Below are positions 3,273 through 58,934 of a stretch of DNA of 64,000 bases, piece after piece. The number at the start of each line of letters is the position of its first letter. Position 1 is the stretch's first letter. Position numbers and translations under genes: made by a program. Below the pieces are notes generated by a model. The model was given only the letters and a program-made list of their open reading frames with translations. It did no database searches and was not told where the DNA came from. The stretch spans positions 41,106,001 through 41,170,000 of the forward strand of contig NC_043009.1 in NCBI RefSeq assembly GCF_006345805.1, read 5' to 3'. Source of the stretch: Octopus sinensis (taxonomy: Eukaryota).

Positions 3273-3318
<46 letters not shown>

Positions 3319-3474
3319 AGTGTATGTATATATGTATACATGCAAACACACACACACACAGAAACACACAAACATATGAATATGGAGGACACATACATGC
3401 ACACACTTGCATGCATGCTTACGTACATACATGTGTATGCACACACATACTGACCCACATACATGTGCACAAAG

Positions 3475-8518: not shown

Positions 8519-8612
8519 CCACTGCGTCGCTGGAACTGAAGTACACAGTTCTATACAAGGGTTTTTGTATTTTTTCCATAAACTAGGGGATGGCTACTGA
8601 CATTAAGCTTAA

Positions 8613-8830
8613 ACCTTTAGTATTCAGATTTCTTTGTCAAATGTATTGACTTTTAATGCACATTGTTTTGAACTAATCAGGCATTATTTTGTAGCTTCAC
8701 GATTTCAAAGTGTGTTTGATTATTTTTAGAATGGCATTGTAAGGTAGGTGTGAGAAGTTGGATCAGGTCAATTTTAACAAAAAACAGGGAGACTATTTGG
8801 CCGGATATGGCCAGATTAAATGCTAAAGGG
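8613..8830. mobile_element. piggyBac-like MITE (TTAA-flanked)
   Basis: TTAA at 8609-8612 and 8831-8834; termini acctttagtattc / aaatgctaaaggg; related copy at 51526-52157. Confidence 0.75.
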
Positions 8831-9583
8831 TTAAGGATTATATAATGTACAAGTACAAAGAAAGAATTAAAGAAAAAGGATTCATTATATTGAATGTTAT
8901 CAATAATATCGAGTGGAAATAGAGGGGTGCTGCAGTTCTACAGTGCCTATACATGAGCCACCACTGGGTATAACTTATCTTGAAAAGAACAGATTTAGAG
9001 TGCGCTCCTTTAATTTCAAGATGGTATTGTGAATTTAAGGAGTAAGACTTATGACTGGTATTTCTAGCACCGCGAGTGACAAAGTAGAGAGAGACTCCTT
9101 CAAAAGTTTGTTTCTCTATAAGTTGCAACTGTTGTGAAACCATCAACTAACTTTCTTCTTCAGTATACATGCCTACTCTGACAAAAGTAATAAGGTGGAT
9201 TATTTCTGAACATTCATTACGAGCGCATTATATGTGATGACTAAGGCAGTAGTTGCCATTGCATTTAAACTTCTCGACTCATGAATGCATTCAGAAGACA
9301 CACGACAGCAATGGCATGCATTCTGCATTCTATAAATGGAAAAAGGTAATATCTTATTCCTTTATTCTATTGAAAGAAGATTTGGGTTTATTTAAGATTT
9401 ATTAAAGCCATATTGAGACAGAGTCAGCTCCTAACTTATTATGAAAGATAATATCAATACTTGCTCTCATTATAAATATGCGTTTGTGTGTGCATGCACA
9501 TGTGTGTTTGCATGCACATGTATGCGTGTGTGAGTGCATATATATATATATATAGACATGTGTGTGTGTGTGTTTATGTATAT

Positions 9584-11074: not shown

Positions 11075-12408
11075 TAAGCAGATATACCTGGCATTGCCCA
11101 GCTTAAAGACAATAATCAAATTTTAAAATGCTGTCTAGATTATGCAGGTGTGAAGTGCTAATAGCTGAGATACCAACTTTCTGCATTAATAACTCTCCAG
11201 CCCATGCCAGCATGGAACATAAATGTTAAGTGAAATGTTAAAAGAAAGTTTTCAACTCATATATGCATATAAAGTAAATACACATAATTCAAAAACACAT
11301 TTTGTGTAGCTTATTTCGCAACCAAAGGAAACAGGTACGGATTATAAACAACGAAAGGCCGGTTTTGGTGATTCATTTGACAGAGGTAGTAGAGAGCCAA
11401 TCCAAAGATATATCTGATCTTGGATCTTGAAAGTTTGCATGAATCCTGGCTCAGTTAAATCTCTTGTGGCTCCAAATGATGTCATCTGTAGTGCAGTGTT
11501 GTATTGTCTAATTTTGTTTTGAGAGTGCTTGGAATCTTGCTCAGTTGATGACAACAGTTTCTTCAATGGCTCTGGAGGTTGGGGGATTGCAGGGAGTTTA
11601 ACCTTTCCATCACTGCAGCACAGTGCAGGTGTCTCTCCAGGCCACTTTGTTGCTTTACAATATATCCACTCAGTTGTCAGTGCACCAATGGAAACTTTAG
11701 CATAATTAACTGCTGCATTGTAATTGAAAGCTGCTTCATAGAATTTGCTTCTCTGAGCTGTTACAACTGCTCTTCGTTCTGCAGTGGAGATCCTATTCCT
11801 TGTCAGCCATGAATACTTCTGTTCATCACTTTGAGATGCTCTGGCTTTTGTAGTGCACTGTCTGTCCATTTCTTGGTATGCTTCCCTTTCTGTAGCTGTC
11901 TCTCTTTCCCTGGACAGAGACATTTTTTTGGCTGGCCTTGACATTGTAGACAAATTTGACATGTAGTTAATAACAAAAAAAAAAGCAAGAAAAAATACAA
12001 GGAAAAACAACAAGAGGACTTGGTACATGCAAAGTATTAATAAGATGTTCAAGGAAGGAAAGAAAGGGTGATTTACATTTTCAGCAAAGCTCTCCTTCGG
12101 AAACAGGAGACAGAGGGAAGTCCAAGAGAAAAAAAAGATCACCAACAATACTCATGTATTTTACACACAAACACACATATGAGGTGATTCATAAGCACTC
12201 AGCCAAGAGCGCATTGCATCTTGCAGCAGAAACACCCATAAGCTAATGCAGTTCATTACATAATTTCTTCTTCCCTTGTCACTTATTACACTAATTATTC
12301 GACTAATGCTTTTTTTCTAAAGCATATGTATATTGAATTCCAACACCAGCTTAGTAGTATCCTCATACTTAAGAAAAATATTTAAATACACACACACACA
12401 CACACAGA
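11075..12408 (-). mobile_element. Internally deleted Helitron
   Basis: Helitron-like N-terminal ORF; degenerate 3' hairpin plus terminus at about 11075-11103 (minus strand ctgggcaatgccaggtatatctgctta); candidate 5' TC preceded by A at 12408 (boundary inferred). Confidence 0.7.
11342..11962 (-). pseudogene. Helitron RepHel protein, N-terminal fragment (truncated and decayed)
   Basis: Translation contains YCKATKWPGETPALCCSDGKVKLP..PPEPL, IRQYNTALQMTSFGA and FKIQDQIYLWIGSLLP, matching the conserved Helitron N-terminal motifs; no Rep or helicase domain follows. Confidence 0.8.
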
Positions 12409-12784
12409 TATGTTAAAGCTTTATTAACCAATCTTCTTACATCTCTTTATTCAGATCTACTTAGCGGCATCAGAAATGTTCAAGATGGGTGTACAGACTG
12501 ACTGTAATTCATATTGTGGTGGAAAGCACACATTTTCTTCACCTGTTTATCTACATGGAATAGGAAAAACTGTCCAAGTTTTAATTGCAAGGTTTTCCCA
12601 CCCACCTTATGTTTTAATAAGATAGTCAAAGGAATAGTAGGGCGCTAATCTCACCAGCTGAAAGAGAATGGTGAGATTTGCTTTGCTGTTGATATCTGCC
12701 AGAATATGCATACACTACAGTGTTACTCATTGCAGAAGTAAGAACAATTCTACTGTAAGTAATATCAGGAATAATGGTATCTTT

Positions 12785-12950
12785 TATCTTTAATCTCTTT
12801 TACTTGTTTCAGTCATTTGACTGTGGCCATGCAACAGCACCGCCTTTAGTCGAGCAAATCGACCCCAGGATTTATTCTTTGTAAGCCTAGTACTTATTCT
12901 GCTGGACCCTTTTGCCGAACCGCGAAGTTACAGAGACGTAAACACACCAT
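12785..12950 (-). mobile_element. SINE family C, 3' portion
   Basis: ttttacttgtttcagtcatttgactgtggccatgc...gacgtaaacacacc. Confidence 0.75.
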
Positions 12951-13344: not shown

Positions 13345-13995
13345 TAATTTGACCAATATTTTGTAAAATATACGATATGTTTTTGTGTTTATGAGCATGG
13401 AAGAGAGTGAGAATAAATGATTACTTGCGTAGATACAGGTTTGCATATTGTTGTTGTGTAGCTTGGTCACCCCTTGGTCAAGCAGGAATGTAACAAGAAT
13501 AGCTAAGTGCTCAGTTTAACAAGCACCTGATGCTTTTAATTCCTTTAGCAGAAAACTGGCTATGTTGGGTGCTAATATGACCACCAGTGATTTGTGTGTT
13601 GCACATTTGTAGTTGACAATATTATTGTACATCTGTAATTAACAGTGTTACTGCACAGCTGTTGTTGACAGCACTGTTGTACATCTGTAGTTGACGATGC
13701 TATTGTACATCTGTAGTGGACAGTATAGTGGACAGTACTATTGTACATTTGTGGTTGACAGCCCTATTGTACACCTGTAGTTGTCAACTGTGCAGTAACA
13801 CTGTTAATTACAGATGTACAATAATATTGTCAACTATAAATGTGCAACACACAAATCACTGGTGGTCATATTAGCACCCAACATATCCAGTTTTCTGCTA
13901 AAGGAATTAAAAGCATCAGGTGCTTGTTAAACTGAGCACTTAGCTATTCTTGTTACATTCCTGCTTGACCAAGGGGTGACCAAACTACACAACAA
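13345..13995. repeat. Inverted copy of 16068-16522 with a 210-bp fold-back, flanked by 13-bp direct repeats
   Basis: Arms 13449-13658 and 13788-13997 are reverse complements; caggtcaatgaga at 13332-13344 and 13996-14008. Confidence 0.9.
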
Positions 13996-14174
13996 CAGGT
14001 CAATGAGAACTCAGTTCCAACATTTTGCATTTTGTGACTGAGTAGCATTCATGTAATAAAAAAGTTGATGCTCCAAGGAAGCACAGCTAACAGTTTTTTT
14101 ATTAGTTTTAAATAGCTAAAATGGATTCTTTTGCAATATAAATACATATTCAAATAATTAAATCATTAATTTAA

Positions 14175-15919: not shown

Positions 15920-16258
15920 GTTTTGTAATATAGTATTATTGTCAACTATTGATATACAATATTATAGTGAGCTACAGATGTACAATAGCATTATCAACAA
16001 CAGATGTACAATCTTTGTGTCAATTTCAGATGCACAATAGCATTGACAACTGTAGATGTACAATAGTGTTGTCAACTACAGGTGTACAATAGGGCTGTCA
16101 ACCACAAATGTACAATAGTACTGTCCACTATACTGTCCACTACAGATGTACAATAGCATCGTCAACTACAGATGTACAACAGTGCTGTCAACAACAGCTG
16201 TGCAGTAACACTGTTAATTACAGATGTACAATAATATTGTCAACTACAGATGTGCAAC
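15920..16258. repeat. Diverged ~26-bp minisatellite (consensus near tacagatgtacaatagcattgtcaac)
   Basis: Roughly a dozen recognisable units by eye. Confidence 0.85.
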
Positions 16259-16522
16259 ACACAAATCACTGGTGGTCATATTAGCACCCAACATAGCCAG
16301 TTTTCTGCTAAAGGAATTAAAAGCATCAGGTGCTTGTTAAACTGGGCACTTAGCTATTCTCGTTACATTCCTGCTTGACCAAGGGGTGACCAAGCTACAC
16401 AACAACAATATGCAAACCTGTATCTATGCAAGTAATCATTTATTCTCACTCTCTTCCATGCTCATAAACACAAAAACATATCGTATATTTTACAAAATAT
16501 TGGTCAAATTATTTCATTACCT
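16068..16522. repeat. Inverted-repeat partner (probable donor) of 13333-13783
   Basis: Reverse complement aligns continuously with only a few substitutions. Confidence 0.9.
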
Positions 16523-22356: not shown

Positions 22357-23810
22357 TTACTTCCCAAACCACATGGTTCAGGGTTCAATCCCATAGTGTG
22401 GCACCTTGGGCAAGTGTCTTTTACTATAGCCTTGGGCTGACCAAAGATTTGGGAGATTTGGGAGAAAGAAGCCCATTGGATATATATGTGTATATGTATG
22501 TATGTATATACATAAATTATTAGAGAGTTATCCACTATGTGGATAACTCTAGTGCTAAAAATAGCTCCGAAGCAACCACAGAAGATCCGTTTCCAACTAG
22601 AATCAACACACCATAGTTTTTTGTGCTAAGCCACTTGGTGTTAAATTGACGGTATTATTAAATTAATATCGATTTTTCACCCTCATTTATAATTTTGTAT
22701 GTATGTATATATATCTGTGTGTCTCTTTGTGTCTGTATTTGCTTCCCTCCCTCCCCATCACCATTTGACAACTGGTGTTGGTGTGTTTACATCCCCGTAA
22801 CTTAGTGGTTCAACAAGAGAGACCGACAGAATAAGTACAAGACTAAAGAAATAAGCCCTGAGGTCAATCTGTATGACTAAAACCCTTCAAGGTGATGCTC
22901 CAGTATAGCCAGTCAAAAGACTGAAACAAGTATATATATATAAAAAAAAATGTCTGTTAATTCCATATCATGATAGTTCCAGGCAGGTCTGCATCTACTT
23001 CATACTTGTTTAAATTTCTAGCCAACTCCAGAATTTTATATATGAAAAGACAAAGTTGATTTCAGACAATATTTATGCAGATATCGCTATGTCTTTTATA
23101 AGTTTGCTTCCTAACCATCTGGCTTTAGAGTCAGGCCAACTGTGTAGCACCTTGGGCAAGTGTCTTCAACCAAAACCTAATGAATAGATTCTATCGATAA
23201 AAACTGTAAGAAGTTCATAATAATGATAATAAAAGTGGTTTAGATGGTGGTGGTAGTGGTAGCAGTGGATAGGTAACTTCCTTCACACACTTTCCTTCAG
23301 ATTTGTATATGTCTTTAGAAAAACAACACTAAAACCCCATTTACGATCATAATTTCTTTGCAGGTGACCATTTTATATTCCATATACATAAGTTTGCAGG
23401 TTGTTCTTCAGAACATCTCAAAACCACATGGCACTTCTCCAAACAGGAGCATATTGAAGTAATTACGTGTTTTATATTCCCAAGACTTATTCCGCTCAAT
23501 ATAAATAACAAGTGTCTAAGACTATATGCATATATATTTATGTACCCAATATATTTATTAATAACAGCACCTGATACTTGTAGAAGTAGACCTTCCAAGT
23601 TAAGCCCTCAAAATTGCATGTCTACGATACAGGTGCTGTAAAGAAGGACACACATGATGCGAGCCACATAAACCTTTACTTATTTTTGTTTGACAGCAAT
23701 GATTTTGATTTTCCAAACACATTTAGACAGCTGGCTGAAGGTGAAGACGGGTTTTTTTTATAATGTGGATATTTATTTTCCACAAACTTACACACCTTGT
23801 CTGTCTGGCA

Positions 23811-26818: not shown

Positions 26819-29244
26819 TAATAATAATAATGATAATAATAATGAGGGCAATGACAAAAGCAACGATGACAAGGCACAGTGGCAACAATGACAGAAATGA
26901 TGTTAAGAGTAGGACGATGAGGGCAATGATGGCGATGACAATGATGGTAATGTTGGTGGTGGCGATGGTGATGATATTGATGATGGTGATGCTGATGATT
27001 TAGATGATGTTGAGGGTGATGATGGTCATGATGATGATGATGATTACTGTGATAATGACACACACACACACAATATAAAAAAAATGGAACCCCTGCTTCC
27101 TTTTGTGTGAAAATGCCACAATAGTAAATTTTACATTAAAATCACTCTGATAAAAAGGCTGCTGCTTCTCGCCAATAAAAGAGCGTTTCATCAATAAAGG
27201 TGTGCATGTGCAAGCGAGTGTGGACATGAGTGTGTGTGTGTGTGTGTGATGCAAGTGAGTGTGCATGGACGTGTATGCACAAGTGAGTGTGCATGAGCAT
27301 GGGAGTATGCATGGGTGTGTGAATAAGTGTGTGAGTGTAAATGGATGAGTGAGTGAATGCGTGTACAAGTATGTATTTGTGCATGTGTGTGTAAGAGAGA
27401 GAGACTCGGTTAAGGTGGACTGGGAAGCTGCATTAATGGCAACACGATGCTTAAATAATAACACAGGAGAAAATGCCAAGCTTTTTAATTTCATTGTCTA
27501 CATCTGACGCCTTGTCTCTTTTTTGCTTTGCACATTTTTGCTCTTTCATTCGCTCTACCACCTGACCCCCCCCCCGCCCGCCACTGCCACACATTATATC
27601 TCCAGGTAAAATTTCACTACGATGCATCACATTGAGATTTCACACTCTCTCCTCCTCCTCCTCTCTTTCTCTCATCCTTTCTTTGTCTTTCATTCACACA
27701 CACACATTTTTTTTTGTGTATACCTTCTATATAGCTTTTACTTTTTGCAAATTTTTTTTTTTGTGTTGTTAAAGACACAAATACACACACACATACACAA
27801 AGAAAATAATGAAGAAAATAATGAAAAAAAAAAACAAAAAAAAAAAAAAATGGGTGTATTGGTTATGAAGCCTTTTAGATATGGCATAGAAAAGCCATCA
27901 CCACGACAATATAAGCTGACACAATCAACATTGTCATCACGTATAACACTGCATGATAACAACTCTCCTCTCAGGCAAAACAGTTTTCTGTCTTTGTTAT
28001 ACAGGTGCACACAAATTTTGCACAGATATCCACTTATGCATGTACAACACACAAATACACTAACCCTCCCCCCCCACACACACACACACTACATACATCC
28101 CCATCACTCTTTTACTCTCCTTTCTTTCCTTTTTATTTGCTAACATGATTTATTTTTCAGTAATTTTAAGCAAGTTTTACAGAAATAAAATTATAAAATT
28201 ATTTTCTATTCAAGAAATTATGAAATATCTAAACATGGAATTGCTTTGAGTTGAAATAATGCATGTATAATAATAATAAAAAAAAAGAAGACAAGAAACA
28301 AATGTGGGCTATATAATTTTGACCTCTGTCAAATAATTTTGGCTTTTGAATCAGAGTTTCCACTGAAATCAAGTGTTTACGCTAAACACCAACTATGCTA
28401 ATAATCTAATTGATATGAAAAGTTAAGGAGTAGGAATGGGAGAGCAGGGCTGCGATAGCATATCATAGTGGGATCTATAACAATGTGATTCAGGTGTAAT
28501 AAAATAAACAAACAACCACATATCATTAAATGACATTCCTATAACAATTGTTATACCCCATGCTCAGTTCATAGTTGGTATAACAAGGGAAACATAATGA
28601 GAGAAAAGATGAGAATAAAGAACAGGAAAAAAGACTTGTTGGAACAACAGCGGTTAGATATCAGTTTGATCAAAGTCATAATTGCTAACCTCCCCTTAGT
28701 TCAAGCACACACAAAAACATGCACACTTTTGTAATATAGAGTTATAACTTTATCATCAATTTCTGCACTCTATCCAAATTCTATGTTGGGTTTCCAATTT
28801 AACCCTTTTGTTACTCTATTTATGTTGAAATACATTGCCTTTTGTATCAACTAATTTTAACAATAATGAATCTAGCAAAATAACTTCACCACTATTAAGC
28901 TAGTGATTGGAATATAAAATTACCATGGCATTTTATGGCTATAAAAATGTGAAGTTGACAGCAATGAACTGTGGGCCGCCTCAGATAAGGTGGTATCAAC
29001 GTGTTAACCACTTTAGCAATAACCAGTTAAAAATAACAGCCAAATCTTCCTCAAATCAAGCTCTGCTTTCTTATACTTATAGATTTGTTGATGATGAAAT
29101 GACTTGGGCTAAACAATTCTTTTTATTTAGAAGCTCACGACTCTTTATAGCAGCAGTCTTTTCTGCACCACAGACTAGTTTGATGCAACACAGTTTTCCT
29201 CCAGACCAGGGGATCATGCACATAACAAAACACAATGAAAAGTA

Positions 29245-29620: not shown

Positions 29621-30705
29621 GAGAGAGGAGAGGAAGGTGAGATAAAGAGAGAAAGAAAGAGAGATAGTCAGGGTGAATTTAATTATTACATAATAATACA
29701 TATATAATGCAAAAACATTCCACAAACTGTGACAGTTGATAAAATAGAAATAAACTTTTAAAATTTATTTTTTCTGTGTGGCCTTATACCAAATAATCTA
29801 AGGCCCAATACTGGTCAGCAACCCACTGGTTTGGGACTCCTGCTCTATACAGCCTACAAAACTGGTAGGAGGGAAGGAAGGAGAGACAATTGCATCCTCA
29901 AACTCGAGATTTGGCTTCTATACATGAAACAGAGTAGATTCTTTGTCAAGTGGTGATATTAAAATGAGCAACAGATTAAGTCTACCATCCAAGTAGGCCA
30001 TGCTGGGATTTGAACTCAGAACACAAAGAGCTGGAACAAACACCATGAGACGTCTCTTCTAATATCCTAACATTTACTCCAATTACTGTTTGGTAATTCA
30101 GTGCATGAAATTTAATTTATAGCAATGCTGAATATTTTGGGCGCGTATCAGGTTACTAAGAGTTCACTCAGACAAAACAATAACAACATTTATCATAATT
30201 ACCACACATTAATTATTTATAAATACAATGCTTAATCATCATCATCACCATCAATTCCATAATGATTATCATCACGATCATCGTTACCACTATCATCTTT
30301 TCCTACGTCTGCTTTTTGCCATGCAGGAATGAGAAGCTGGATGAGAGTTATTTTGATACAGTACTTTGTGGCAGGATGCCATTCCACCTGCTAACCCTTA
30401 CTTGTTTCTCCTAGTAAGGTATTCCACCAGTCTTTGCACATGAAACTATTGAAGCTGCAGGACATATTTTTTTATGCATAATACAAAAACATAACACTAA
30501 GTTCTCCACCAAACAATGCAAATTCAAAGACACACATACATACTATTACATCATCAACAATCAACATCATCATATTGCTATTAATATTAACCTTCCAACT
30601 CATGCCAGCATGGAAAGCGGATGTTAAATGATTATGATGATGATGTGCTATAAGGCAGAAACTGAAAGAAGCCCGTTGTGTGTATATATATATATATATA
30701 TATAT

Positions 30706-31103
30706 ACACTCTTTACTCTTTTACTTGTTTCAGTCATTTGACTGTGGCCATGCTGGAGCACCACCTTTAGTCGAGCAAATTGACCCCAGGGCATATTCTT
30801 TGTAAGCCTAGTACTTATTCTATCGGTCTCTTTTGCTGAACCGCTAAGTTACAGGGACGTAAACACACCAGCATCGGTTGTCAAGTGAAGCTGGGGGGCA
30901 CAAACATAGATACACAAACACACACACACACACATAAATACATATATATGGCAGGCTTCTTTCAGTTTCCGTCTACCAAATCCACTCACAAGGCTTTGGT
31001 CGGCCCGAGGCTATAGTTGAAGACACCTGCCCAAGGTGCCACACAGTGGGACTGAAACCGGAACCATGTTGTTGGTAAGCAAGCTACTTACCACACAGCC
31101 ACT
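30706..31103 (-). mobile_element. Near full-length SINE family C with internal CA/TA microsatellite
   Basis: Reverse complement aligns to 51585-52020. Confidence 0.88.
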
Positions 31104-31765: not shown

Positions 31766-33262
31766 GTGAATGTATGTGTATTTTTGTGTCTGTGTTTGTC
31801 CCCCATCGCTGCTTGACAACCGGTGTTTGTGTGTTTCCACACTCAGGATTTAGCAGTTTGGCAAAAGAGACAAATAGAATAAGTATTAGGCTTAAGAAAT
31901 AAGTCCAGGGGGTCGATCTGTTTGACTAAAATCCTTCAAAGTGATGCTCCAGCATGGCCACAGTGAAATGCCTGAAACAAGTAAAAGAGAGTATACACCC
32001 CCACACACACACACATACAAACATGCACGTATGTATGTATATATATATTCAGACGTTTGGCTTCCAAGTAGTTTCCAAATATCAATTTTTTTTCTTGTAA
32101 AAGCAGCAGTTAATCTGAGTATGTTGCCGAAAAATAACTTACTGAAGGTGTGCTACGGTGAGGACTGAACCTAATACCACATAATTGTTACCAAAATTGT
32201 CATAAAAACAACAAAAAAAAAAACAACTTAAACCATATAGCTGTGTCTGTGCTTATATGAAAGACAAGTAAATTATATTTGTTCGTTGATAAGGCAGAAG
32301 GTTTTGTTTCCAGGATGCAACGTTAAATACGAGAGAATATAACTATAATAACAGCACAAACAGCTTCTGAATCAGTAACAAATACATTTAATTCCAACCA
32401 CTTCCCACATTAACATATGTTAATATTGTTAAGTAAACCAGATTAACTCCTCTCCCTTACATTAAGATTAAATCCTACATTAATAGCTAGATTAATAATA
32501 TCAAGTATGGTGATTGTCATGGAATACAGCAGAATACATTAGCTGCTATCATCAAGGAATACTGACAGCAGCAAAACATAAAGAACCATGCTTCTTTGAT
32601 TATGGCAGGTAGGAATAAGTGAAGTAAGAAAAAATAATATAATCCACATAAGAATGGCGAAGCAAGGGAAAACTTGAGATATTTTTGTGGTAGGATCACA
32701 CTTTGATAATAAAGTCGAAGTCGTCGCAGTGTGTTAGTGTGAAGGGTGGATGTGTTACGATATGTACGAGTTGGATATTACGTTAAGACGTGTACGAAGA
32801 CATGTAATGAAGGTGGGCGGATGGGGAAAGATAGAGATGAGAGGAAACAACAATAACAATCACACACACAGACACACACACACAGATAACCATGCGCATA
32901 GACATACACACATATGCAGCCATATACATGCACGATGCAAAAGCAAGTTGAAATAATCATTTCATATACATACATAGACAGATACACATATTTATATATG
33001 TACATACATCTCTCTCGCTATATATATATATATATATACATACATACACACACATACACAATGTACACACATATAATTACTTGCATACATACAACATATA
33101 TGTATATATGATATATGTATATATATAGATACACACACACACATACACACACATATATACATGCGCAGAAACAAATACATATAAGTGTATATGCACATAT
33201 ATATATATACATATATATATATATATGAATATGTATAAATTATGAACATATATAGACACACA

Positions 33263-40793: not shown

Positions 40794-41219
40794 AGTGAAA
40801 TCAGTTAAGCCTTTAAAAATAAACTATCTAAAAAACACCAAGTGCATTTTCAACTTCTTTCAATATTTCTACCCATGTGGAATAAAATAGCTTTGTTTCT
40901 TATTAATAATCTTTTATCTTTTAATCATTTCAGTCAGTAGACTGTGGCCATGCTGGAGCACTGCGATGACAGATTTAGTCACACAAATTGACTCCAATAC
41001 GTTTTTTTTTAAAGTCTATTATTCTATTGGTCTCTTTTAGCTGACCTGTTAAGTGTCAGGGATGTAAACAAAGCAACACCAACAATCAAGCAGTGGTGAA
41101 GAATAAACACAAATGCAAAGACACATACATAGATATATAAATTTATGAGAAATACATGAGGTAGAAGGAGGGGAGGACTAACAATAACAGCATAAAAAAA
41201 TAAACCTTGAACAAGTATT

Positions 41220-43525: not shown

Positions 43526-44541
43526 CTATCACAGTAGCCATGTATATCTTTTCATCCTGTTTTTGAATCTTCAGCCCGACATAACTCCAGATTTCCAAAA
43601 TATTTTGTCTAAGGTCTTTTGTCAATGTCAAAACGGCATTTGGGATTAAGGTTAACATGAAATTTTTATAGAAGACTTTAATTTCTATCACTTTCAAACA
43701 GGAAGCTTAATATCACAGGATCAAGAGTAGTCTCAAGTAGGTGAGTATCAAAGGGGCTAAAACAGAAAGTTTGTATTATAGAAACGGGGGCAATTTCAGA
43801 TGGGTTTGCATCAAAAGGGTGAAGCAAGTGCTCACGTACTTCAGCTGGTCACTCTCATTGGCAACACACCAGCTCTGCTCACTCAACAAACAATTAATTA
43901 AGGTGATAAGAAAAACTAAAAAAAAACAACAACAAAACCACAGTACAGAGATCATGTGATGGTCATGCCTTTCTTGATGACATTAGCTAATAAACAAAGT
44001 GAAATGACTACAAGTGGGTACCACAAATAGGGTCACATTACAGCTTGTTAATCTCTAATCTGCAGCAATCTATCATCTCAAAACTCCCAAACAATTTCTG
44101 ATCCCTTTTTACTCTAGCTCTGCCCTTTTTCAGCCTTTTTCTCCTTTATAGTTATTACAACAATGCAGCCTTTACAGCTCACATATCCAACGCCGCACAG
44201 TTAAATACAGCATGATTTCAAACCCAACGAATCAGCGACACGTTCTATTATTTGAATAGTGCTCAAGTGAATAGTGACGGTGATGGAGTTATTAAATCTC
44301 CAAGATGAATTTCATGACTCATTGAAGACATATAGACAGAGATGAAAAGCTTATTGTGACAATGAATAGATGAAAAGAGAAGACAGGAGGGTGTCATCAA
44401 CAGAGCCAACATCTTTGATCACATTCATACACAACCAACACAACATCCCCGAGAGAAACATGTCTTCTTCTTCCATACTGTAAGTGAACATCAGAACAAT
44501 AATATAAGAAGTTTAGATATCATGCCTCTGTGTGTATGCGG

Positions 44542-44587
<46 letters not shown>

Positions 44588-44943
44588 CACACACATGTAC
44601 ATACATACACACACACATATATATATATATTTATTTATATATACACACACATATATATATACACACAAACATATAAGTGTGTATTTGTATGCTGTATACA
44701 CACCTCCACATTAACACAATCATGTGCATACACACAAATATATTTGTATATAATATACATATATGTGTGCGCGTGTGTGTGTGTATATACAATATATGCA
44801 TAGATATAATATATAGACATGTAAATATATATCATAGATCTATATATATATATATACACATAATATATATAAACATATTTAATATATATGTATATATATA
44901 TATATATATTATACACACATATAGACTGATACATATATATATA

Positions 44944-46940: not shown

Positions 46941-47812
46941 TGAGATGATTATTTATTTGTCAATTAGTTAGCTAATTAACTAATTGATTGTTTGATTAAT
47001 CATCTGATTGAGCAATAAATCAGTCAGGTTTGCAAAAGTCTGACTGATTAATCAAAGAATCAATTAGCTAAATTTCTTAAAAGGTTAACCAACTTACAAA
47101 TAAAAATAAGGAAGTGAAACAAAACCACAGTGTGTATTTATTATTCATATAATGACCCTCTTAAGATACAATAAAATCATCTAGAAATATGTGTATGAAT
47201 GATGTACATTGAAATTCACCTATAAATAAGAGTTTATAATACATTGGGCTTTGAAAGATAAAGGATAAAAAAAAGAGAAGGAAAGTTAGTTGTAGGGTCT
47301 TACTACCTTTGTTTCAACCAAAGTACTTTTAACCAAACGTACACGGTATGCTGTTTCTTCTAGTTAGATTGAGTTTTCGAGATATTGATTTTGGAAGACT
47401 TACACTTTGCTCTTTTACTTGTTTCTATCATTGGATAACAGCTTTGCTGGAGCACCACCTTATTCTATTGGTTGCTTATGCCAAACTGCTAACAAGGACA
47501 AAAACAAATTGACACCATTTGTGAAGCAGTGGGGGTGGGGAACAGACACTCAAGCACATACATACATGACAAATATTGTTCAGCTTTCATAACCAAATTC
47601 ACTTATGAGGTAGATTCTAGAAATTTTAAGACATTTTTTTTAGGAGAGGTACTTATAACTTTTCTAGATTATTGTAATTTTAGCATATCACTACAATACA
47701 TCTAATAAGCCGATCACCAACTTTTGTTATTCCAGATTGAAAGGGAAAGCTGTAAAAGCACTTTGAACACATTCTACGAAATATTGCTTGCCACAGCTGG
47801 CTATTAGGCAGA

Positions 47813-48760: not shown

Positions 48761-49570
48761 AAACATGTTTATTGGTAGCATTAATTTTTTTATTCTTTTT
48801 CTTTCATTTTTTTCTTTTGGCAACATATTTAGATTTCAAGAAGAATTACAAAGTGATAATAAGTACCAAACATTAAAAGATTGCAGTTTATTTAGTAAAC
48901 CTGGAATATTGATTTCAAATTTTGGCAGAAGGCCAGCAATTTTTTTTTGGGGGGGAGACCAAGTCAATTACATCAGCCCCAGTGCAAAACAGGAACTTAT
49001 TTTATTGACCCCGAAAGGATGTAAAACAAAGTCAATCTAAGCAGAATTTTAACATAGAACATGCAGGTAGGCAAGATGATGCAAAGCATTTTGCCTGGTG
49101 TACTAACGATCTAGACCAGCTTGGTGCCTTGAAGTAAACCTGAAAAATTAAACAATATACACACTGAGTATGGAGGTGAAGGCAAGATGTATGATTTCTG
49201 GAGGCCCTTCAAGACCAGCGAGATCAATGCTATTAATATTTCATTTAAACTGTTCAAAATCAACACCTGCAGGAAAAATATGAAAAGGGAAGAGGTTCCA
49301 AGGGGATAACGTACTTGGGGGAATGGACTGAGTATAATGGTTAGTGTGAGGTTTATTAAGGGAAGGGGAGGATTTAACACAATAAAAGGGATGACAGGAA
49401 AAATGACAAATGAATCATGAGTGCTTGAGTAGAGGCAGTGCAAGTATATATTTTGATAAAAGTATTTGACCGACTGGTGAAATACATCAAGCCAAAGAAG
49501 GAACTTCTAGGTTAACCTTTAGCATACTGATTTGTTCCTAGAACAGTTTCCCATACCACTGCATTATTCT

Positions 49571-50151: not shown

Positions 50152-50985
50152 TTTTGTTTCACAAAAAAATCAAAGCAACAAAGTTCAATTTCAAAGTTTG
50201 TCTACCTCGTGGTTAGTATATAGACAATGAAAATAGTGTCTGAATTGAAAGTAGCCAGTTTACAGCTTAAAGTACTGGAAAGAAACTTAGTGCTGTGTTT
50301 ATTTTAAACATCTATTGCAAGGCGACAAAATGCGTCTGCAGCTATACGGGAGAAAACTCATGGGTGACAAACTGTGACAGTAGCTTGGAGAAAGTTAATG
50401 GTTGACTTCCAAACAATTGCTAACTACGATTTAGACTGTACCCTACTGTCTTAAAAAGTAAAATGGACACACAAAAGGCAACGGTTTTGACAAGAGGGCC
50501 AAAGCAATTACATCGAACCTTGATTGGAATTTATTTTACTGGACTCCAAAATGACAAAACACAAAATCCACCTTGGTGGAATTTGAGCTTAGAAAGGGCC
50601 TAAAGAAATACTGCAAAGCATTTTGTCCACTGTGGCGATAATTCTATCAGATTGCTGCCCTCGATGCATTGAATATTGTAACCTAAGACGTGCTATGCCT
50701 GAATAAGAAAGAACAACTTTGATGATAGCTTTGCTAATTTGATGTTGGGAATACTAACGATGGCAACAACTACAATAATCTAAGGAGGAAGTTTCTAATT
50801 GGCAGCTTCATAAGTTAGAATTAACAGCAAAATCAGTGTCAAATCACACTGCGTTGTCTTAATTCTTTCTACTACTAGGCACAACCCCAAAACCTTTATG
50901 GAGAGGGGCTAAGTCATTTAACCCCTTGCAGACAGATTTAGTACGGACAGTCTGTGCTGTGCACCCAGTATTAGGCCATTCAGTA

Positions 50986-51048
50986 TTTTTTTATTCTTTT
51001 ATTTGTTTCAGTCATTTGACCACGGCCATGCTGGAGCACCGCCTTTAG
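50986..51048 (-). mobile_element. 3' tail fragment of SINE family C, directly downstream of the 5S sequence
   Basis: Minus strand ctaaaggcggtgctccagcatggccgtggtcaaatgactgaaacaaataaaagaataaaaaa. Confidence 0.85.
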
Positions 51049-51056
51049 ATAGAAAG

Positions 51057-51176
51057 ATCTTTACAGCACCTAGGTTTCCCAAGCGGTCACCCATCTAAGT
51101 ACTAACTAGGCTCGCCTTTGCTTAACTTCGGTGATCGGAAGAGAACTGGTGTTTCCAAAGTGATATGGCCGTAAAC
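51057..51176 (-). rRNA. 5S rRNA: Full-length 5S rRNA sequence, probably a pseudogene or variant copy
   Basis: GTTTACGGCCATATCACTTTGGAAACACCAGTTCTCTTCCGATCACCGAAGTTAAGCAAAGGCGAGCCTAGTTAGTACTTAGATGGGTGACCGCTTGGGAAACCTAGGTGCTGTAAAGAT; colinear with metazoan 5S without indels; compensatory pairs in helices I, II and V; apparent private changes at positions 30, 37, 62, 81 and 118; no T4 run directly after. Confidence 0.93.
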
Positions 51177-51525
51177 ATAACTACATAAATTTTCATACAG
51201 GAAATTTGACAGGGTATTTACAGATTCTTCTCAGTATGGTACATTTGAAAACATGGTACCACACAGAGTGAGACATAGCACTGCTCACACACACACACAC
51301 ACAATGTTTCGATGCAGTCAGTACTGCTTCCTGTCTGCAAGGAGTTAAATCAACCCCAGTGATCAACTAGAACTTATTTTATCAAGGATGAAAAGGCAAA
51401 GTCGACCTTAATGTAGTTTGAAATCAAAACGTAAAGCAGGAAGAAATGCTGCTAAACATTTTCCCCAATGCTTCTGTCAACTCAGTACCTTACTGTACAG
51501 TCTTAATAAAAGAAAACCACATTAA

Positions 51526-51763
51526 CCCTTTAGCACTCGGATTATTCTCTCGAATGTAATGCATTTTGATTCACATTGTTTTGTGGCGCCGGAGTGGCTG
51601 TGTGGTAAGTAGTTTGCTTACCAACCACATGGTTCTGGATTCAGTCCCACTGCGTGGCACCCTGGGCAAGTGTCTTCCACTATAGCCTCGGGCCGACCAG
51701 AGCCTTGTGAGTGGATTTGGTAGACGGAAACTGAAAGAAGCCCATCGTATATATGTATATATA

Positions 51764-51800
<37 letters not shown>

Positions 51801-52157
51801 TTTTGTATGTCTGTTTGCCCTGCCCACACCCCCACCCGAACATCACTTGACAACCAATGCTTGTGTGTTTACATCCATGTAACTTAGCGGTTCGGCAAAA
51901 GAGACCGATAGAATAAGTACTAGGCTTACAAAGATTAAGTCCTGGGTTCGATTTGCTCGACTAAAGCGAGGCTCCAGCATGGCCGCAGTCAAATGATTGA
52001 AACAAGTAAAAGAGTAAAGAGATTATCTCATCGCTTCGAGATTTTGATGATGTGATCCTTTATTTTTAGAATGACAGGGTAGGTGTGAGAGGCCAGATCT
52101 GACCAGTTTGAACTTAAGACAGGTAGAAGATTTGGGGCCGGATTAAATGCTAATAAT
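51526..52157. mobile_element. piggyBac-like MITE (same family as 8613-8830) split by a SINE C insertion
   Basis: TTAA-ccctttagca start; MITE sequence resumes at 52021 and aligns with 8690-8830. Confidence 0.75.
51585..52020 (+). mobile_element. Full-length SINE family C (tRNA head, CORE-like block, internal microsatellite)
   Basis: ggcgccggagtggctgtgtggtaag (A box-like), ggattcagtccc (B box-like), gcaccctgggcaagtgtctt (CORE-like), tail gaaacaagtaaaagagtaaaga. Confidence 0.9.
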
Positions 52158-53005: not shown

Positions 53006-53467
53006 TAGCCTTAAGCACTCTCTCATATAATATAAATATAACATTAGCAATTAATTAACTACTTTATACAACAACAATATTAACGCTATCTTAGTCCTAT
53101 TGGATATGTCAGCTGGAAAATTTGCAGAGTCATTAGAGCACCTGACAGAGTGCTTTGCAGTATTTTATCACAGCCATCTACAGTCTGTGTTCAAATCTCA
53201 CCTGGGTCAATTTCATTTTTCATTTCTTAATAAACATAGTACCAGTCACGTACTGGGGTCAACTGCTACTACCACTGCATCTCCCTCTCTCCATATATAT
53301 ATATATACACACACATTGAGAGAAACAGACAGACAGAAGCAGGCAGGCAGACAGAAAGATATAGATAGCACATAGATATTGATGGTGACCTTCTGTACAG
53401 TTTTCATGAAGCAAATTTCAGTTACAAGGCATTGGTCAAACTGAGGCAATATTACAAGATACTTTAA

Positions 53468-53689
53468 CCCTTTCGTTACCAACCTGGCTGAAACCAGCTC
53501 TGGCTCTGAGTACAAATGTCTTGTTTTCATAAGTTTTGAATAAAAAAATCTCTCACCAAACCTTAGTCACAATTTATGTTTCTAACACTAGCTGAATGAT
53601 AACTAAGTTATTTTACTAAATTCTTTGTTATATTTAAAGTACTTGAAAGAAACACAGAGCATCTCAAAATAAATACAGTAATGAAAGGG
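53468..53689. mobile_element. piggyBac-like MITE (222 bp)
   Basis: TTAA at 53464-53467 and 53690-53693; TIR CCCTTTCGTTAC / GTAATGAAAGGG. Confidence 0.88.
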
Positions 53690-54048
53690 TTAAGGCATCA
53701 AGCTGTCAGAATTGTTACTACACCAGGGAAAATGTTTCACTGCAGTTCTTCCGACTGTACATTCTGAGTTCAAATTCCACCCAAGATCAACTTTGCCTTT
53801 CATCCTTCAGGGGTCAATAAGATAAGTACTGGTTGAGCAGTGGGGTTGATGTAATCGACTTACTCCCTCCCATGAAATTACAGGTTATTGTGCAAAAATC
53901 TGAAACCAATACTACAAGATACTTGCCCAAGATACCATGCAGTGGGTTTGAACCAAAATGCATTGGATTGTAAGCAAACTTATTAACCACTATGCTTGCA
54001 TTTAGACATACACACGCACACAGATGTATGTATGTGTATGTATGTATG

Positions 54049-54094
<46 letters not shown>

Positions 54095-54105
54095 CATACA
54101 TATAC

Positions 54106-56720: not shown

Positions 56721-57143
56721 AAGGAAAAGTTCCAGAACCTCTGATCCAGAACTAAATTCTCCAAAGTGTTATTCATTTTCTGGAAAACAATAAAGCAGGA
56801 TTGACACAAAGGAAATTGGCTGTTATTTCTAGCACATTAAAGGACCACATAGATGCTCTCACTTTAAGCTCAATTAAGGCTGTTTTATGCAGCCACAGAC
56901 CTTAAAACTCCCAAACCAGCTTATGATGAGAGGAGACAAAAAAAAAAAAAAAAAGGGAAAAACGCACACACACACACATACACACACTCATACACAAACA
57001 CACATACGTACATAGACAGACGCAAACAAAACCATTATCGTGCTTACTATGAAACAATTGAGTGACTATAATGGATGGAATAAACAAGTGTGACAGTGAT
57101 GAGTGTGCATAATGTGTGAAGAAAGTATCTACTTCAGGTGGGT

Positions 57144-57257
57144 GACTACTACTACTACTACTACTATTACTGTGCTAACAACAATGACGACTACTACTAC
57201 TACTACTACAACAACAACTACTACCACAATCACTATAACTTTCACCACTACCACCAA

Positions 57258-57305
<48 letters not shown>

Positions 57306-58660
57306 CACAATCAATATAACTTTCACCACTACCACCCACCACCACTACTACTACTACTACAACTACCACAATCACTATAACTTTCACCACTACCACCAAC
57401 ACCACCACTACTACTACTACAACTACTACTACCACAATCACTATAACTTTCACCACTACCAACACCACCACCACTACAACTACTACTACAACTACCACAA
57501 TCACTATAACTTTCACCACTACCACCAACACCACCACTACTACTACTACTACAACTACCACAATCACTATAACTTTCACCACTACCCCCACACCACCACG
57601 ACTACTACCACTACAACTACCACAATCACTATAACTTTCACCACTAACCACCAACACCACCACTACTACTACAACTCCTACTACCACAATCACTATAACT
57701 TTCACCACTACCACCACCACCACCACTACTACTACTACTACAACTACCACAATCACTATAACTTTCACCACTACCACCAACACCACCACTACTACTACTA
57801 CAACTACTACTACCACAATCACTATAACTTTCACCACTACCACCACCACCACCACCACTACAACTACTACTACAACTACCACAATCACTATAACTTTCAC
57901 CACTACCACCAACACCACCACTACTACTACTACTACAACTACCACAATCACTATAACTTTCACCACTACCACCACCACCACCACTACTACTACTACTACA
58001 ACTACCACAATCACTATAACTTTCACCACTACCACCAACACCACCACTACTACTACTACAACTACTACCACAATCACTATAACTTTCACCACTACCACCA
58101 CCACCACCACTACTACTACTACTACAACTACCACAATCACTATAACTTTCACCACTACCACCAACACCACCACTACTACTACTACAACTACTACTACCAC
58201 AATCACTATAACTTTCACCACTACCACCACCACCACCACTACTACTACTACTACAACTACCACAATCACTATAACTTTCACCACTACCACCAACACCACT
58301 ACTACTACTACTACAACTACTACTACTACCACAATCACTATAACTTTCACCACTACCACCACCACCACCACTACTACTACTACTACAACTACCACAATCA
58401 CTATAACTTTCACCACTACCACCACCACCACCACTACTACTACTACTACAACTACCACAATCACTATAACTTTCACCACTACCACCACCACCACCACTAC
58501 TACTAGAACCACCAATAATACTACCACCACCACCATCTCCACTACTACTATGGGTACTATTATTACCACCACCACCACCACCACCACTACTACTACTACT
58601 ACTACTCTCACCACTACTACAACTACGCCCACCATCACCACCACCACCACCACCACCACC
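57144..58660. repeat. Triplet-based minisatellite: 20 copies of the anchor cacaatcactataactttcaccactac separated by variable (CAC/TAC/AAC)n
   Basis: Anchors counted by eye between about 57225 and 58480; unit about 60-70 bp. Confidence 0.95.
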
Positions 58661-58934
58661 ACCATAGTAGCTTTAGGCATTCACAGTGGTTAACTTGGAC
58701 ATTAGCAGAATACTGATTAAACATGCTACCAGTGACAAATGTAATGTCACATAGTAACACCTGAACCCACCCTTCCCTCTGCTAACTCCCTTCATTCTCT
58801 TTTTTTTTCTCTCTCTCTCTCTCTCTCTCTTCCTCATCCTCATCCTCTCTTTCTCAGCTATATGCACCATTAGAAAAAGAGGAAATCAAACATGAAAACA
58901 GTACAAAAACACACAAACATACATAAGACACAGA

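What the first reader, a model, noticed from the sequence alone, without database searches (positions are those of the whole stretch)
50922..51344. A 5S rRNA sequence packaged inside a TTAA-flanked piggyBac-like MITE
Seen: 14-bp TIRs and a TTAA duplication enclose 423 bp containing a complete 120-nt 5S sequence; removing the element restores a continuous SINE B. Knowledge: 5S-bearing mobile elements are known (Cassandra TRIMs, SINE3) and 5S genes are often dispersed, but I do not recall a piggyBac-type MITE carrying 5S in cephalopods. Inference: either a cut-and-paste vehicle dispersing 5S genes and Pol III promoters, or a one-off insertion into a pre-existing MITE.
Basis: partly seen in the sequence, partly recalled or inferred. 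Interest (0 to 1): 0.75.

Follow-up and report, generated by a model that had tools for sequence, protein, structure and literature searches.

The report
5S-headed SINE nested in piggyBac-like MITE
The 5S rRNA sequence is real and does lie inside a real TTAA-flanked cut-and-paste mini-transposon, but it is fused to the tail of the genome's commonest SINE and has no terminator of its own, so it is most likely one jumping element sitting inside another (ordinary in a repeat-rich cephalopod genome), not a vehicle built to spread 5S genes.

Summary
A 423-bp insert (50922-51344) has 13/14-matching 14-bp terminal inverted repeats and a TTAA on each side. Removing it and keeping one TTAA restores a host repeat that aligns without gaps to four copies elsewhere in the window. 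A full-length 5S (Rfam 105.6 bits) lies at 51058-51176 on the minus strand.

It has no T4 terminator; the first one lies 166 nt downstream, outside the element. The 191-bp module therefore has the build of a 5S-headed SINE (SINE3 type), or of a 5S/SINE chimeric retrocopy. It sits inside a 232-bp MITE backbone.

174 bp away, another TTAA-flanked MITE carries a nested SINE A, so this kind of nesting happens locally. Published annotation lists 9.8 Mb of 5S-class SINEs and 36 piggyBac families in Octopus vulgaris.

I could not reach other genomic copies, so I could not decide whether the composite has itself amplified. I put that at about 0.2. Verdict: ordinary nested transposons, of modest interest.

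The parts
50860..50917 (.). Left part of the interrupted host repeat ('SINE B'), an old and abundant repeat
   Evidence: Aligns to in-window paralogs at 75-82% identity.
50889..50892 (-). First run of four or more T on the minus strand downstream of the 5S. It is 166 nt past the 5S 3' end and outside the element, so it is the nearest possible Pol III stop.
   Evidence: Read directly from the sequence. No AAAA occurs on the plus strand between 50893 and 51057.
50918..50921 (.). TTAA target-site duplication, left copy
50922..50935 (+). Left terminal inverted repeat, CCCCTTGCAGACAG
50922..50985 (.). Left arm of the MITE backbone (64 bp, including the TIR). No other copy in the window.
   Evidence: blastn of the element against the window finds nothing for this part.
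50986..51048 (-). 3' tail of 'SINE A' (CTAAAGGCGGTGCTCCAGCATGGCC...AAATAAAAGAATAAAAAAA), ending in A7 at 50992-50986
   Evidence: 81-86% identical to the tails of SINE A copies at 30705-30770, 51961-52024 and 12782-12849, the same range as those copies show to each other. blastn E-values reach 2e-16.
51049..51057 (-). 9-nt linker TCTTTCTAT between the 5S 3' end and the clear start of tail homology. It may be a remnant of the 5S U-tail or a weak continuation of SINE A.
51058..51176 (-). Complete 5S rRNA-like sequence (119 nt), the head of the retroposon module
   Evidence: RF00001 at 105.6 bits, model positions 1-120, four non-canonical pairs. The minimum-energy fold is not the 5S fold: -28.1 kcal/mol, z = 0.14 against shuffles.
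51177..51344 (.). Right arm of the MITE backbone (168 bp, including the TIR), with a (CA)9 microsatellite at 51286-51303
   Evidence: Only microsatellite matches elsewhere in the window.
51331..51344 (-). Right terminal inverted repeat (CTCCTTGCAGACAG on the minus strand)
51345..51348 (.). TTAA target-site duplication, right copy
51349..51470 (.). Right part of the interrupted host repeat ('SINE B')

Best explanation
There are three layers of transposons. (1) An old 'SINE B' copy was hit at a TTAA by (2) a roughly 232-bp non-autonomous cut-and-paste element of the piggyBac type. That element has 14-bp TIRs starting CCCC/CTCC and made a TTAA duplication. (3) Its interior holds, on the minus strand, a 191-bp retroposon module: a full 5S rRNA-derived head from nucleotide 1, a 9-nt linker, and the last 63 nt of the genome's abundant SINE A ending in A7. 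I read the module as a copy of a 5S-headed (SINE3-type) SINE. Such an element would use the 5S internal promoter for Pol III transcription and the shared tail for recognition by the same LINE reverse transcriptase that moves SINE A. I read its presence in the MITE as an ordinary nested retroposition, most likely private to this copy or to few copies. It is not a 5S gene packaged by the MITE. Shown here: the boundaries, the TSD, the TIRs, the empty site, the 5S match, the tail homology, the missing terminator, and a local precedent for a SINE inside a MITE. Inferred: piggyBac transposase as the mobilising enzyme, retroposition as the route by which the 5S module entered, and the order of events (module entered before or after the MITE's last jump).
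For: The insertion, TSD and TIRs are real. TTAA followed by CYCYTT is enriched in the window, 8 matches against 0.72 expected. Two other TTAA-flanked MITE families of 218-222 bp are present, close in size to the 232-bp backbone left when the module is removed. The 5S is complete and is followed at once by the SINE A tail and A-run. The tail is as diverged (81-86%) as ordinary SINE A copies are from each other. There is no T4 terminator until 166 nt downstream, outside the element. The 5S fold is no more stable than shuffles, z = 0.14. Local precedent: the MITE at 51522-~52165 equals the intact copy at 8609-8834 plus a nested SINE A at 51586-52021. Literature: O. vulgaris has 9.83 Mb of '5S' class SINEs in 4 families, about 0.35% of the genome (my calculation from the paper's figures, not a number the paper states). 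That predicts about 225 bp per 64-kb window, and 191 bp are seen. The same paper lists 36 piggyBac and 74 MITE families (PMC13282606). The giant squid genome has about 24,000 5S-derived loci described as 'likely SINEs' (PMC6962438). SINE heads are known to be recruited from 5S and tRNA by template switching (PMC4758252).
Against: No second copy of the module or of the MITE backbone could be examined, so neither '5S-SINE family' nor 'private insertion' is shown directly. No target-site duplication flanks the module. The best candidate is ATACTGA, 54 nt upstream of the 5S and just after the A-run, which is about what chance gives. The neighbouring nested SINE A also lacks a clear TSD. ARAGORN finds no tRNA in SINE A.
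Confidence: 0.6

Rival explanations
1. Composite family. A 5S-SINE landed in a master copy of the MITE, and the whole 423-bp composite was then amplified by the TTAA-specific transposase. The MITE family would then carry a Pol III type-1 promoter wherever it goes, a DNA-transposon counterpart of Cassandra and Ajax.
For: TIRs and TSD enclose the whole composite and are nearly intact. No TSD of the module is visible, as expected if the nesting is older than the last transposition. Cassandra and Ajax are thought to have arisen in just this way, by SINE3 insertion into a non-autonomous element (PMC10886601). piggyBac families are recently active in O. vulgaris, with 474 recent insertions.
Against: No second copy lies in 64 kb, although two other TTAA-MITE families show several copies or ends there. 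The backbone without the module has the typical MITE size of about 230 bp. Nesting of a SINE in a single MITE copy is seen 174 bp away. A missing TSD is not diagnostic here.
Confidence: 0.2
2. The module is a one-off chimeric retrocopy rather than a member of a 5S-SINE family. A LINE reverse transcriptase began on a SINE A transcript, copied about 63-75 nt, switched template to a cellular 5S rRNA and copied it to its 5' end, like the U6/5S-L1 or -Alu chimeras of mammals.
For: The 5S part runs exactly from nt 1 to its 3' end. The SINE part is only a 3' fragment. The junction shows possible microhomology (…GTAAAGAT / …GGGTTCGAT). Template switching to small RNAs is documented (Buzdin 2003, as cited in PMC4758252).
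Against: 5S-class SINEs already cover 9.8 Mb in O. vulgaris, at the density seen here. From memory only, the 5S head differs from a typical molluscan 5S at many positions, more than the tail differs from SINE A. That suggests descent from an already diverged master. I could not check this against a reference sequence.
Confidence: 0.15
3. DNA-level capture. The MITE picked up a stretch of chromosomal DNA, a 5S gene or pseudogene with its surroundings, by template switching during gap repair, as Pack-MULEs and similar elements do.
For: No retroposition TSD around the module. The linker TCTTTCTAT could be a decayed native 5S terminator region.
Against: The 5S abuts a SINE tail ending in an A-run, which is the signature of retroposition. 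No 5S array or second 5S lies nearby. Capture would still have captured a 5S-SINE.
Confidence: 0.04
4. There is no transposon. The inverted repeats and TTAAs are chance, and the 423 bp is a lineage-specific indel of SINE B.
For: Only one copy was seen.
Against: 0 of 60 simulated windows give such a pair. The 18-mer is unique to the two ends. The 4-bp duplication is exact at a site that is continuous in four paralogs. The terminal CC-YTT motif is shared with other TTAA-flanked MITEs in the window.
Confidence: 0.01

Closest known systems
SINE3 / 5S-derived SINEs (zebrafish SINE3, AmnSINE1, MEG, HaSE3; the '5S' SINE class annotated in Octopus vulgaris)
   Same: A 5S rRNA-derived head starting at nucleotide 1 and containing the internal promoter region, no terminator after the head, and a 3' tail shared with other retroposons and ending A-rich.
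   Different: There is no intervening body: the head is joined almost directly to about 63 nt of tail. No TSD was seen and family membership was not demonstrated. A 2024 review lists 5S-SINEs only for reptiles, insects, fish and mammals (PMC10946416), so cephalopod ones are annotated but not characterised.
piggyBac-superfamily MITEs (e.g. human MER85/MER75, Daphnia mPok)
   Same: TTAA target duplication, short TIRs beginning CC(C/T), a size of a few hundred bp, and no coding capacity.
   Different: The TIR sequence differs from the two CCCTTT... families in the same window. No autonomous partner or second copy was found. It carries a nested retroposon.
Cassandra (plants) and Ajax (nemerteans): TRIMs with a 5S sequence in their LTRs
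   Same: A non-autonomous mobile element containing a 5S-derived Pol III promoter, thought to originate from a SINE3 insertion into the carrier.
   Different: Those are LTR retrotransposons in which every family member carries the 5S. Here the carrier is a DNA transposon and family-wide presence of the 5S is unshown, and I judge it unlikely.
Bipartite chimeric retrogenes (U6, 5S, 7SL fused to L1/Alu 3' parts; Buzdin et al. 2003)
   Same: A full-length small RNA copy fused to a 3' fragment of a retroposon with an A-rich end.
   Different: Those are single events flanked by TSDs. Here the genome class is known to hold a large 5S-SINE population, and no TSD is seen.
Pokey/mPok (Daphnia piggyBac elements with rDNA-derived interior)
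   Same: A piggyBac-type element containing rDNA-related sequence.
   Different: Pokey carries IGS repeats and targets 28S rDNA. It does not carry a 5S.

Membership tests
piggyBac-superfamily non-autonomous element (MITE) | 4-bp TTAA target-site duplication shown against an empty site | tested here: met
   One TTAA restores gap-free continuity with four paralogs.
piggyBac-superfamily non-autonomous element (MITE) | Short terminal inverted repeats beginning 5'-CC(C/Y)... | tested here: met
   CCCCTTGCAGACAG / CTCCTTGCAGACAG, 13 of 14 matching. The TTAA+CYCYTT motif occurs 8 times against 0.72 expected in the window. That piggyBac ends are CCC...GGG is established knowledge, not tested here.
piggyBac-superfamily non-autonomous element (MITE) | Multiple copies sharing the TIRs and interior | tested here: inconclusive
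   No second copy in 64 kb. Scans of metagenome, prokaryote-genome and viral collections and three protein searches gave nothing usable. No eukaryotic genome collection was available.
piggyBac-superfamily non-autonomous element (MITE) | An autonomous relative encoding a DDE_Tnp_1_7 transposase with matching TIRs | not testable with these tools
   None in the window: no Pfam hits on 10 ORFs. Literature reports 36 piggyBac families in O. vulgaris.
Kolobok-superfamily MITE (also targets TTAA) | TIR begins with purines (RR / AGGRR) | tested here: not met
   The termini begin CC and CT. The Kolobok motif is taken from PMC6004289.
Functional 5S rRNA gene | Full-length match to the 5S covariance model | tested here: met
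   105.6 bits, model positions 1-120.
Functional 5S rRNA gene | Pol III terminator (four or more T) directly after the 3' end | tested here: not met
   The sequence after the 5S is TCTTTCTATCTAAAGG.... The first TTTT is 166 nt downstream at 50892-50889.
Functional 5S rRNA gene | A stable canonical three-arm fold | tested here: not met
   The MFE structure is not the 5S fold: -28.1 kcal/mol, z = 0.14. Four non-canonical pairs appear in the Rfam alignment.
Functional 5S rRNA gene | Tandem array or further copies nearby (usual but not universal) | tested here: not met
   A single match in 64 kb even at E <= 1.
SINE3 (5S-headed SINE) | 5S-derived head at the 5' end that includes the internal control region | tested here: met
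   The head starts at model position 1.
SINE3 (5S-headed SINE) | 3' tail shared with a LINE or other SINEs, ending in an A-rich or simple repeat | tested here: met
   A 63-nt tail, 81-86% identical to SINE A tails, ending in A7.
SINE3 (5S-headed SINE) | Flanking target-site duplications | tested here: inconclusive
   None adjacent; the only candidate is a 7-mer 54 nt upstream. The neighbouring nested SINE A lacks one too.
SINE3 (5S-headed SINE) | Many dispersed copies with the same head/tail junction | not testable with these tools
   Indirect only: 9.83 Mb of 5S-class SINEs in O. vulgaris and about 24,000 5S-derived loci in giant squid.
Cassandra/Ajax-like composite (carrier family that always contains the 5S) | The 5S module present at the same position in all or most members of the carrier family | not testable with these tools
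   No other member is available.

The most novel reading that the evidence does not exclude
The 423-bp composite is itself an amplified family: a piggyBac-type MITE that acquired a 5S-headed SINE and now carries a Pol III type-1 promoter to every TTAA site it enters. This would be the first DNA-transposon counterpart of the Cassandra and Ajax retroelements. It would be movable by two unrelated machineries, a transposase acting on the TIRs and a LINE reverse transcriptase acting on the tail.
Probability: 0.2. Interest if true: 0.6.

Novelty: new member of a known kind. Interest (0 to 1): 0.27.

Why it matters
As it stands, this is a clean example of three-deep transposon nesting, and it warns that a '5S gene' hit in a cephalopod genome is usually a SINE head. 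It adds one useful detail: an octopus-type 5S-headed element appears to share its 3' tail with the dominant SINE. That implies head-swapping on a common LINE-recognition tail, in a group where 5S-SINEs are annotated only as a class and have not been described. If the composite turned out to be amplified, it would be a new route for spreading Pol III promoters by cut-and-paste transposition.

Tried and rejected
1. Other copies in the window. blastn of the element with word size 7 and TIR search with up to 3 mismatches found none. Only the SINE tail and the microsatellite recur.

2. Metagenome scan with TTAA+TIR. It gave 83 loci, all chance or unrelated; most are one conserved gut-bacterial sequence, and none extends beyond the 18-mer.

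3. Protein-space route to octopus DNA.
   - A 58-aa frame spanning TIR, arm, tail and 5S found no candidates.
   - A concatenate of all stop-free frames of the element plus a SINE handle found nothing at E <= 10.
   - The Helitron-like ORF of the window found only 32-57% identical relatives, none from octopus.
   - An exact look-up of that ORF found nothing on record.
   - One cuttlefish locus (L084, 22 kb) was fetched; it holds no 5S.

4. Scans for the SINE A tail in prokaryote genomes and viral contigs gave 0 hits.

5. TSD search around the 5S module found nothing convincing.

6. Test for selection on 5S structure. The fold is no better than shuffles. I noticed apparently compensatory changes relative to the molluscan 5S I remember, but I could not obtain a cephalopod reference sequence (PMC326244 is not held), so I make no claim.

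7. Kolobok assignment is rejected on the terminal motif.

8. An autonomous piggyBac in the window: no Pfam hits on 10 ORFs.

9. A literature string search for the SINE tail found 0 papers.

Full report
**1. The observation**

TTAA lies at 50918-50921 and again at 51345-51348. Directly inside are CCCCTTGCAGACAG (50922-50935) and, on the other strand, CTCCTTGCAGACAG (51344-51331), which match at 13 of 14 positions. After a 4/5-nt unmatched stretch both ends continue with AGTACnGAC.

The 18-mer TTAA+TIR occurs only at these two places in the window, against 0.16 expected by chance. In 60 first-order Markov simulations of the window, no TTAA-flanked 14-nt inverted pair with at most one mismatch ever appeared.

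The empty-site test is the strongest evidence. I joined the left flank, one TTAA and the right flank. The result aligns without a gap across the junction to four other copies of the host repeat in the window (53877-53726, 43525-43338, 13148-13104, 48961-49005). These read ...AAGTCgATTAcATCaACCCCAGTG... where the reconstructed site reads ...AAGTCATTTAAATCAACCCCAGTG.... So a 423-bp element inserted at a TTAA and duplicated it.

Rfam finds one 5S rRNA: 105.6 bits (gathering threshold 38), model positions 1-120, at 51058-51176 on the minus strand. No other 5S appears in the 64 kb even at E <= 1.

**2. What the interior really is**

blastn of the element against the window shows that 50989-51048 is repeated at least seven times elsewhere, with E-values down to 2e-16 (30712-30770, 51961-52018, 12789-12849 and others). 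These places are the 3' ends of the window's commonest SINE, here called "SINE A". Its full copy at 51586-52021 starts with A-box- and B-box-like motifs, although ARAGORN calls no tRNA there.

Read on the minus strand, the element is, in order:
- TIR;
- 154 bp of unique arm containing (TG)9;
- the 5S, nt 1-119;
- TCTTTCTAT;
- CTAAAGGCGGTGCTCCAGCATGGCCGTGGTCAAATGACTGAAACAAATAAAAGAATAAAAAAA;
- 50 bp of unique arm;
- TIR.

The tail segment is 81-86% identical to SINE A tails. That is the same range as those tails show to each other, 81-89%. Similarity stops at the A-run in every copy.

There is no run of four T after the 5S. The first on that strand is at 50892-50889, which is 166 nt downstream and already in the flanking SINE B. 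As RNA, the 5S has a minimum-energy fold that is not the 5S fold and is no more stable than shuffled versions: -28.1 kcal/mol, z = 0.14.

Taken together, the 191 bp from 51176 to 50986 has the architecture of a 5S-headed SINE: a small-RNA head with an internal promoter, no terminator, a shared retroposon tail and an A-rich end. It does not have the architecture of a 5S gene.

**3. The carrier**

Removing the module leaves 64 + 168 = 232 bp between the TIRs. The window contains other TTAA-flanked miniature elements of the same size class:
- 8609-8834, with TIR CCCTTTAGCA;
- 53464-53693, 222 bp, with TIRs CCCTTTCGTTAC / CCCTTTCATTAC;
- single ends at 28799, 55319 and 51522.

TTAA followed by CYCYTT occurs 8 times against 0.72 expected. 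The termini start with pyrimidines. This fits piggyBac-type ends (CCC...GGG, established knowledge). It does not fit Kolobok, the other TTAA-targeting superfamily, whose TIRs begin RR/AGGRR (PMC6004289).

I therefore accept "piggyBac-like MITE" as the working classification. Two defining features remain unshown: multiple copies and an autonomous partner. No transposase remnant was found in the window.

**4. A local precedent for nesting**

The TTAA-CCCTTTAGCA end at 51522 lies only 174 bp from the element. It belongs to a MITE of the same family as the intact 8609-8834 copy. When 51586-52021 (a full SINE A) is cut out, the two copies align end to end, with about a 10-nt deletion at the junction and no clear target duplication.

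So SINEs carrying this tail do insert into TTAA-flanked MITEs in this very stretch of genome, and they may leave no recognisable TSD. This weakens the one anomaly of the 5S module, which is that no TSD adjoins it. The best candidate is a 7-mer, ATACTGA, found 54 nt upstream of the 5S and just after the A-run, and that is what chance would give.

**5. Context from the literature**

- A curated repeat annotation of Octopus vulgaris lists a SINE class "5S" with 9,831,953 bp in 4 families, 36 piggyBac families (15.6 Mb), 22 Kolobok families and 74 MITE families. Among recently active elements it lists one 5S-SINE family and six piggyBac families with 474 insertions (PMC13282606).
- My calculation from those figures: 9.8 Mb is about 0.35% of the genome, or about 225 bp per 64 kb. 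The window holds 191 bp. One 5S-SINE copy in this window is therefore just what the background density predicts.
- The giant squid genome paper reports about 24,000 loci derived from 5S rRNA and suggests they are SINEs (PMC6962438).
- A 2024 review lists 5S-derived SINEs only for reptiles, insects, fish and mammals. As DNA transposons with rDNA-derived interior it lists only Pokey/mPok (PMC10946416).
- Kojima (2024) argues that Cassandra and Ajax arose by insertion of a SINE3 into a non-autonomous LTR element, which then propagated (PMC10886601).
- Recruitment of small-RNA heads by template switching is discussed for molluscan SINEs (PMC4758252).

**6. Mechanism and rivals**

Best reading (confidence 0.6): SINE B was hit by a piggyBac-type MITE, and the MITE contains a nested 5S-headed SINE. 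The 5S internal promoter (type 1, TFIIIA-dependent; inferred, not tested) would drive a Pol III transcript through the tail. The tail is what a LINE reverse transcriptase recognises, so the 5S module has its own means of spreading and needs no DNA-transposon vehicle.

I could not determine whether the module entered the MITE before or after the MITE landed here. The typical backbone size, the local precedent and the absence of a second copy lead me to favour a copy-specific nesting.

Rivals:
- The composite is an amplified family (0.2).
- The module is a one-off 5S rRNA / SINE A template-switch chimera rather than a family member (0.15).
- DNA-level capture of a 5S locus (0.04).
- No transposon at all (0.01; excluded).

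**7. What could not be done**

No eukaryotic genome collection was available.
- Scans of metagenomes (chance hits only), prokaryotic genomes and viral contigs found no octopus-type DNA.
- Three protein-space searches and one exact look-up gave no handle on other octopus contigs.
- One cuttlefish locus (L084) held no 5S.

The decisive count, copies of the backbone with and without the module, therefore remains open.

**8. Verdict**

The "vehicle for 5S genes" reading is not supported, because the 5S lacks a terminator, shows no stable fold, and is fused to a SINE tail. This is a new member of known kinds. Interest is modest (0.27), with a 0.2 chance of the more interesting composite-family reading. 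No step needed referral.

Noticed in passing
window 51522-~52165 (SINE A at 51586-52021): A second TTAA-flanked MITE (TIR CCCTTTAGCA) carries a nested full-length SINE A. With the SINE removed it aligns end to end with the intact family member at 8609-8834. There is a deletion of about 10 nt at the junction and no clear TSD.
   Followed up: yes
window 53464-53693; single ends at 28799, 55319, 42986: A MITE family with TTAA flanks and TIR CCCTTTYRTTAC. One complete 222-bp copy and several single ends are present, 5 matches against 0.23 expected.
   Followed up: partly
window 13400-13788 vs 16068-16456; 13449-13661 vs 13785-13997: A 389-nt inverted repeat, 99% complementary, with arms 2.3 kb apart. 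There is also a 213-nt hairpin (98%) at the left arm and internal tandem units of about 25 nt. TTAA-bounded sub-arms contain TTCCTTTAGCAG. This is either a foldback-type element or an assembly artefact.
   Followed up: partly
window 11342-12148 (-): A 268-aa ORF related (32-57% identity, E down to 1e-40) to Helitron helicase-like proteins of arthropods, rotifers and a cuttlefish. It has no close relative in the protein collection and no Pfam hit. It is probably a decayed Helitron fragment.
   Followed up: partly
window 57103-58680: A minisatellite of about 1.5 kb, rich in ACC/ACT, that produces 467-aa and 501-aa pseudo-ORFs on opposite strands (runs of T/H/Y or V). It is not a gene.
   Followed up: no
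window-wide (e.g. 54030-54100, 44529-44600, 3290-3360): Dozens of sub-threshold Rfam 'mir-297 / mir-466 / mir-3149' matches fall on TG/TA microsatellites. They are low-complexity artefacts, not miRNA genes.
   Followed up: no
window 22889-22948, 31945-31988, 40912-40961, 47411-47461: A variant of the SINE tail carries an extra AAATCCTTCA-like insert before the conserved GGTGCTCCAGCATGGCC core. This suggests that several SINE subfamilies share one LINE-recognition tail.
   Followed up: no
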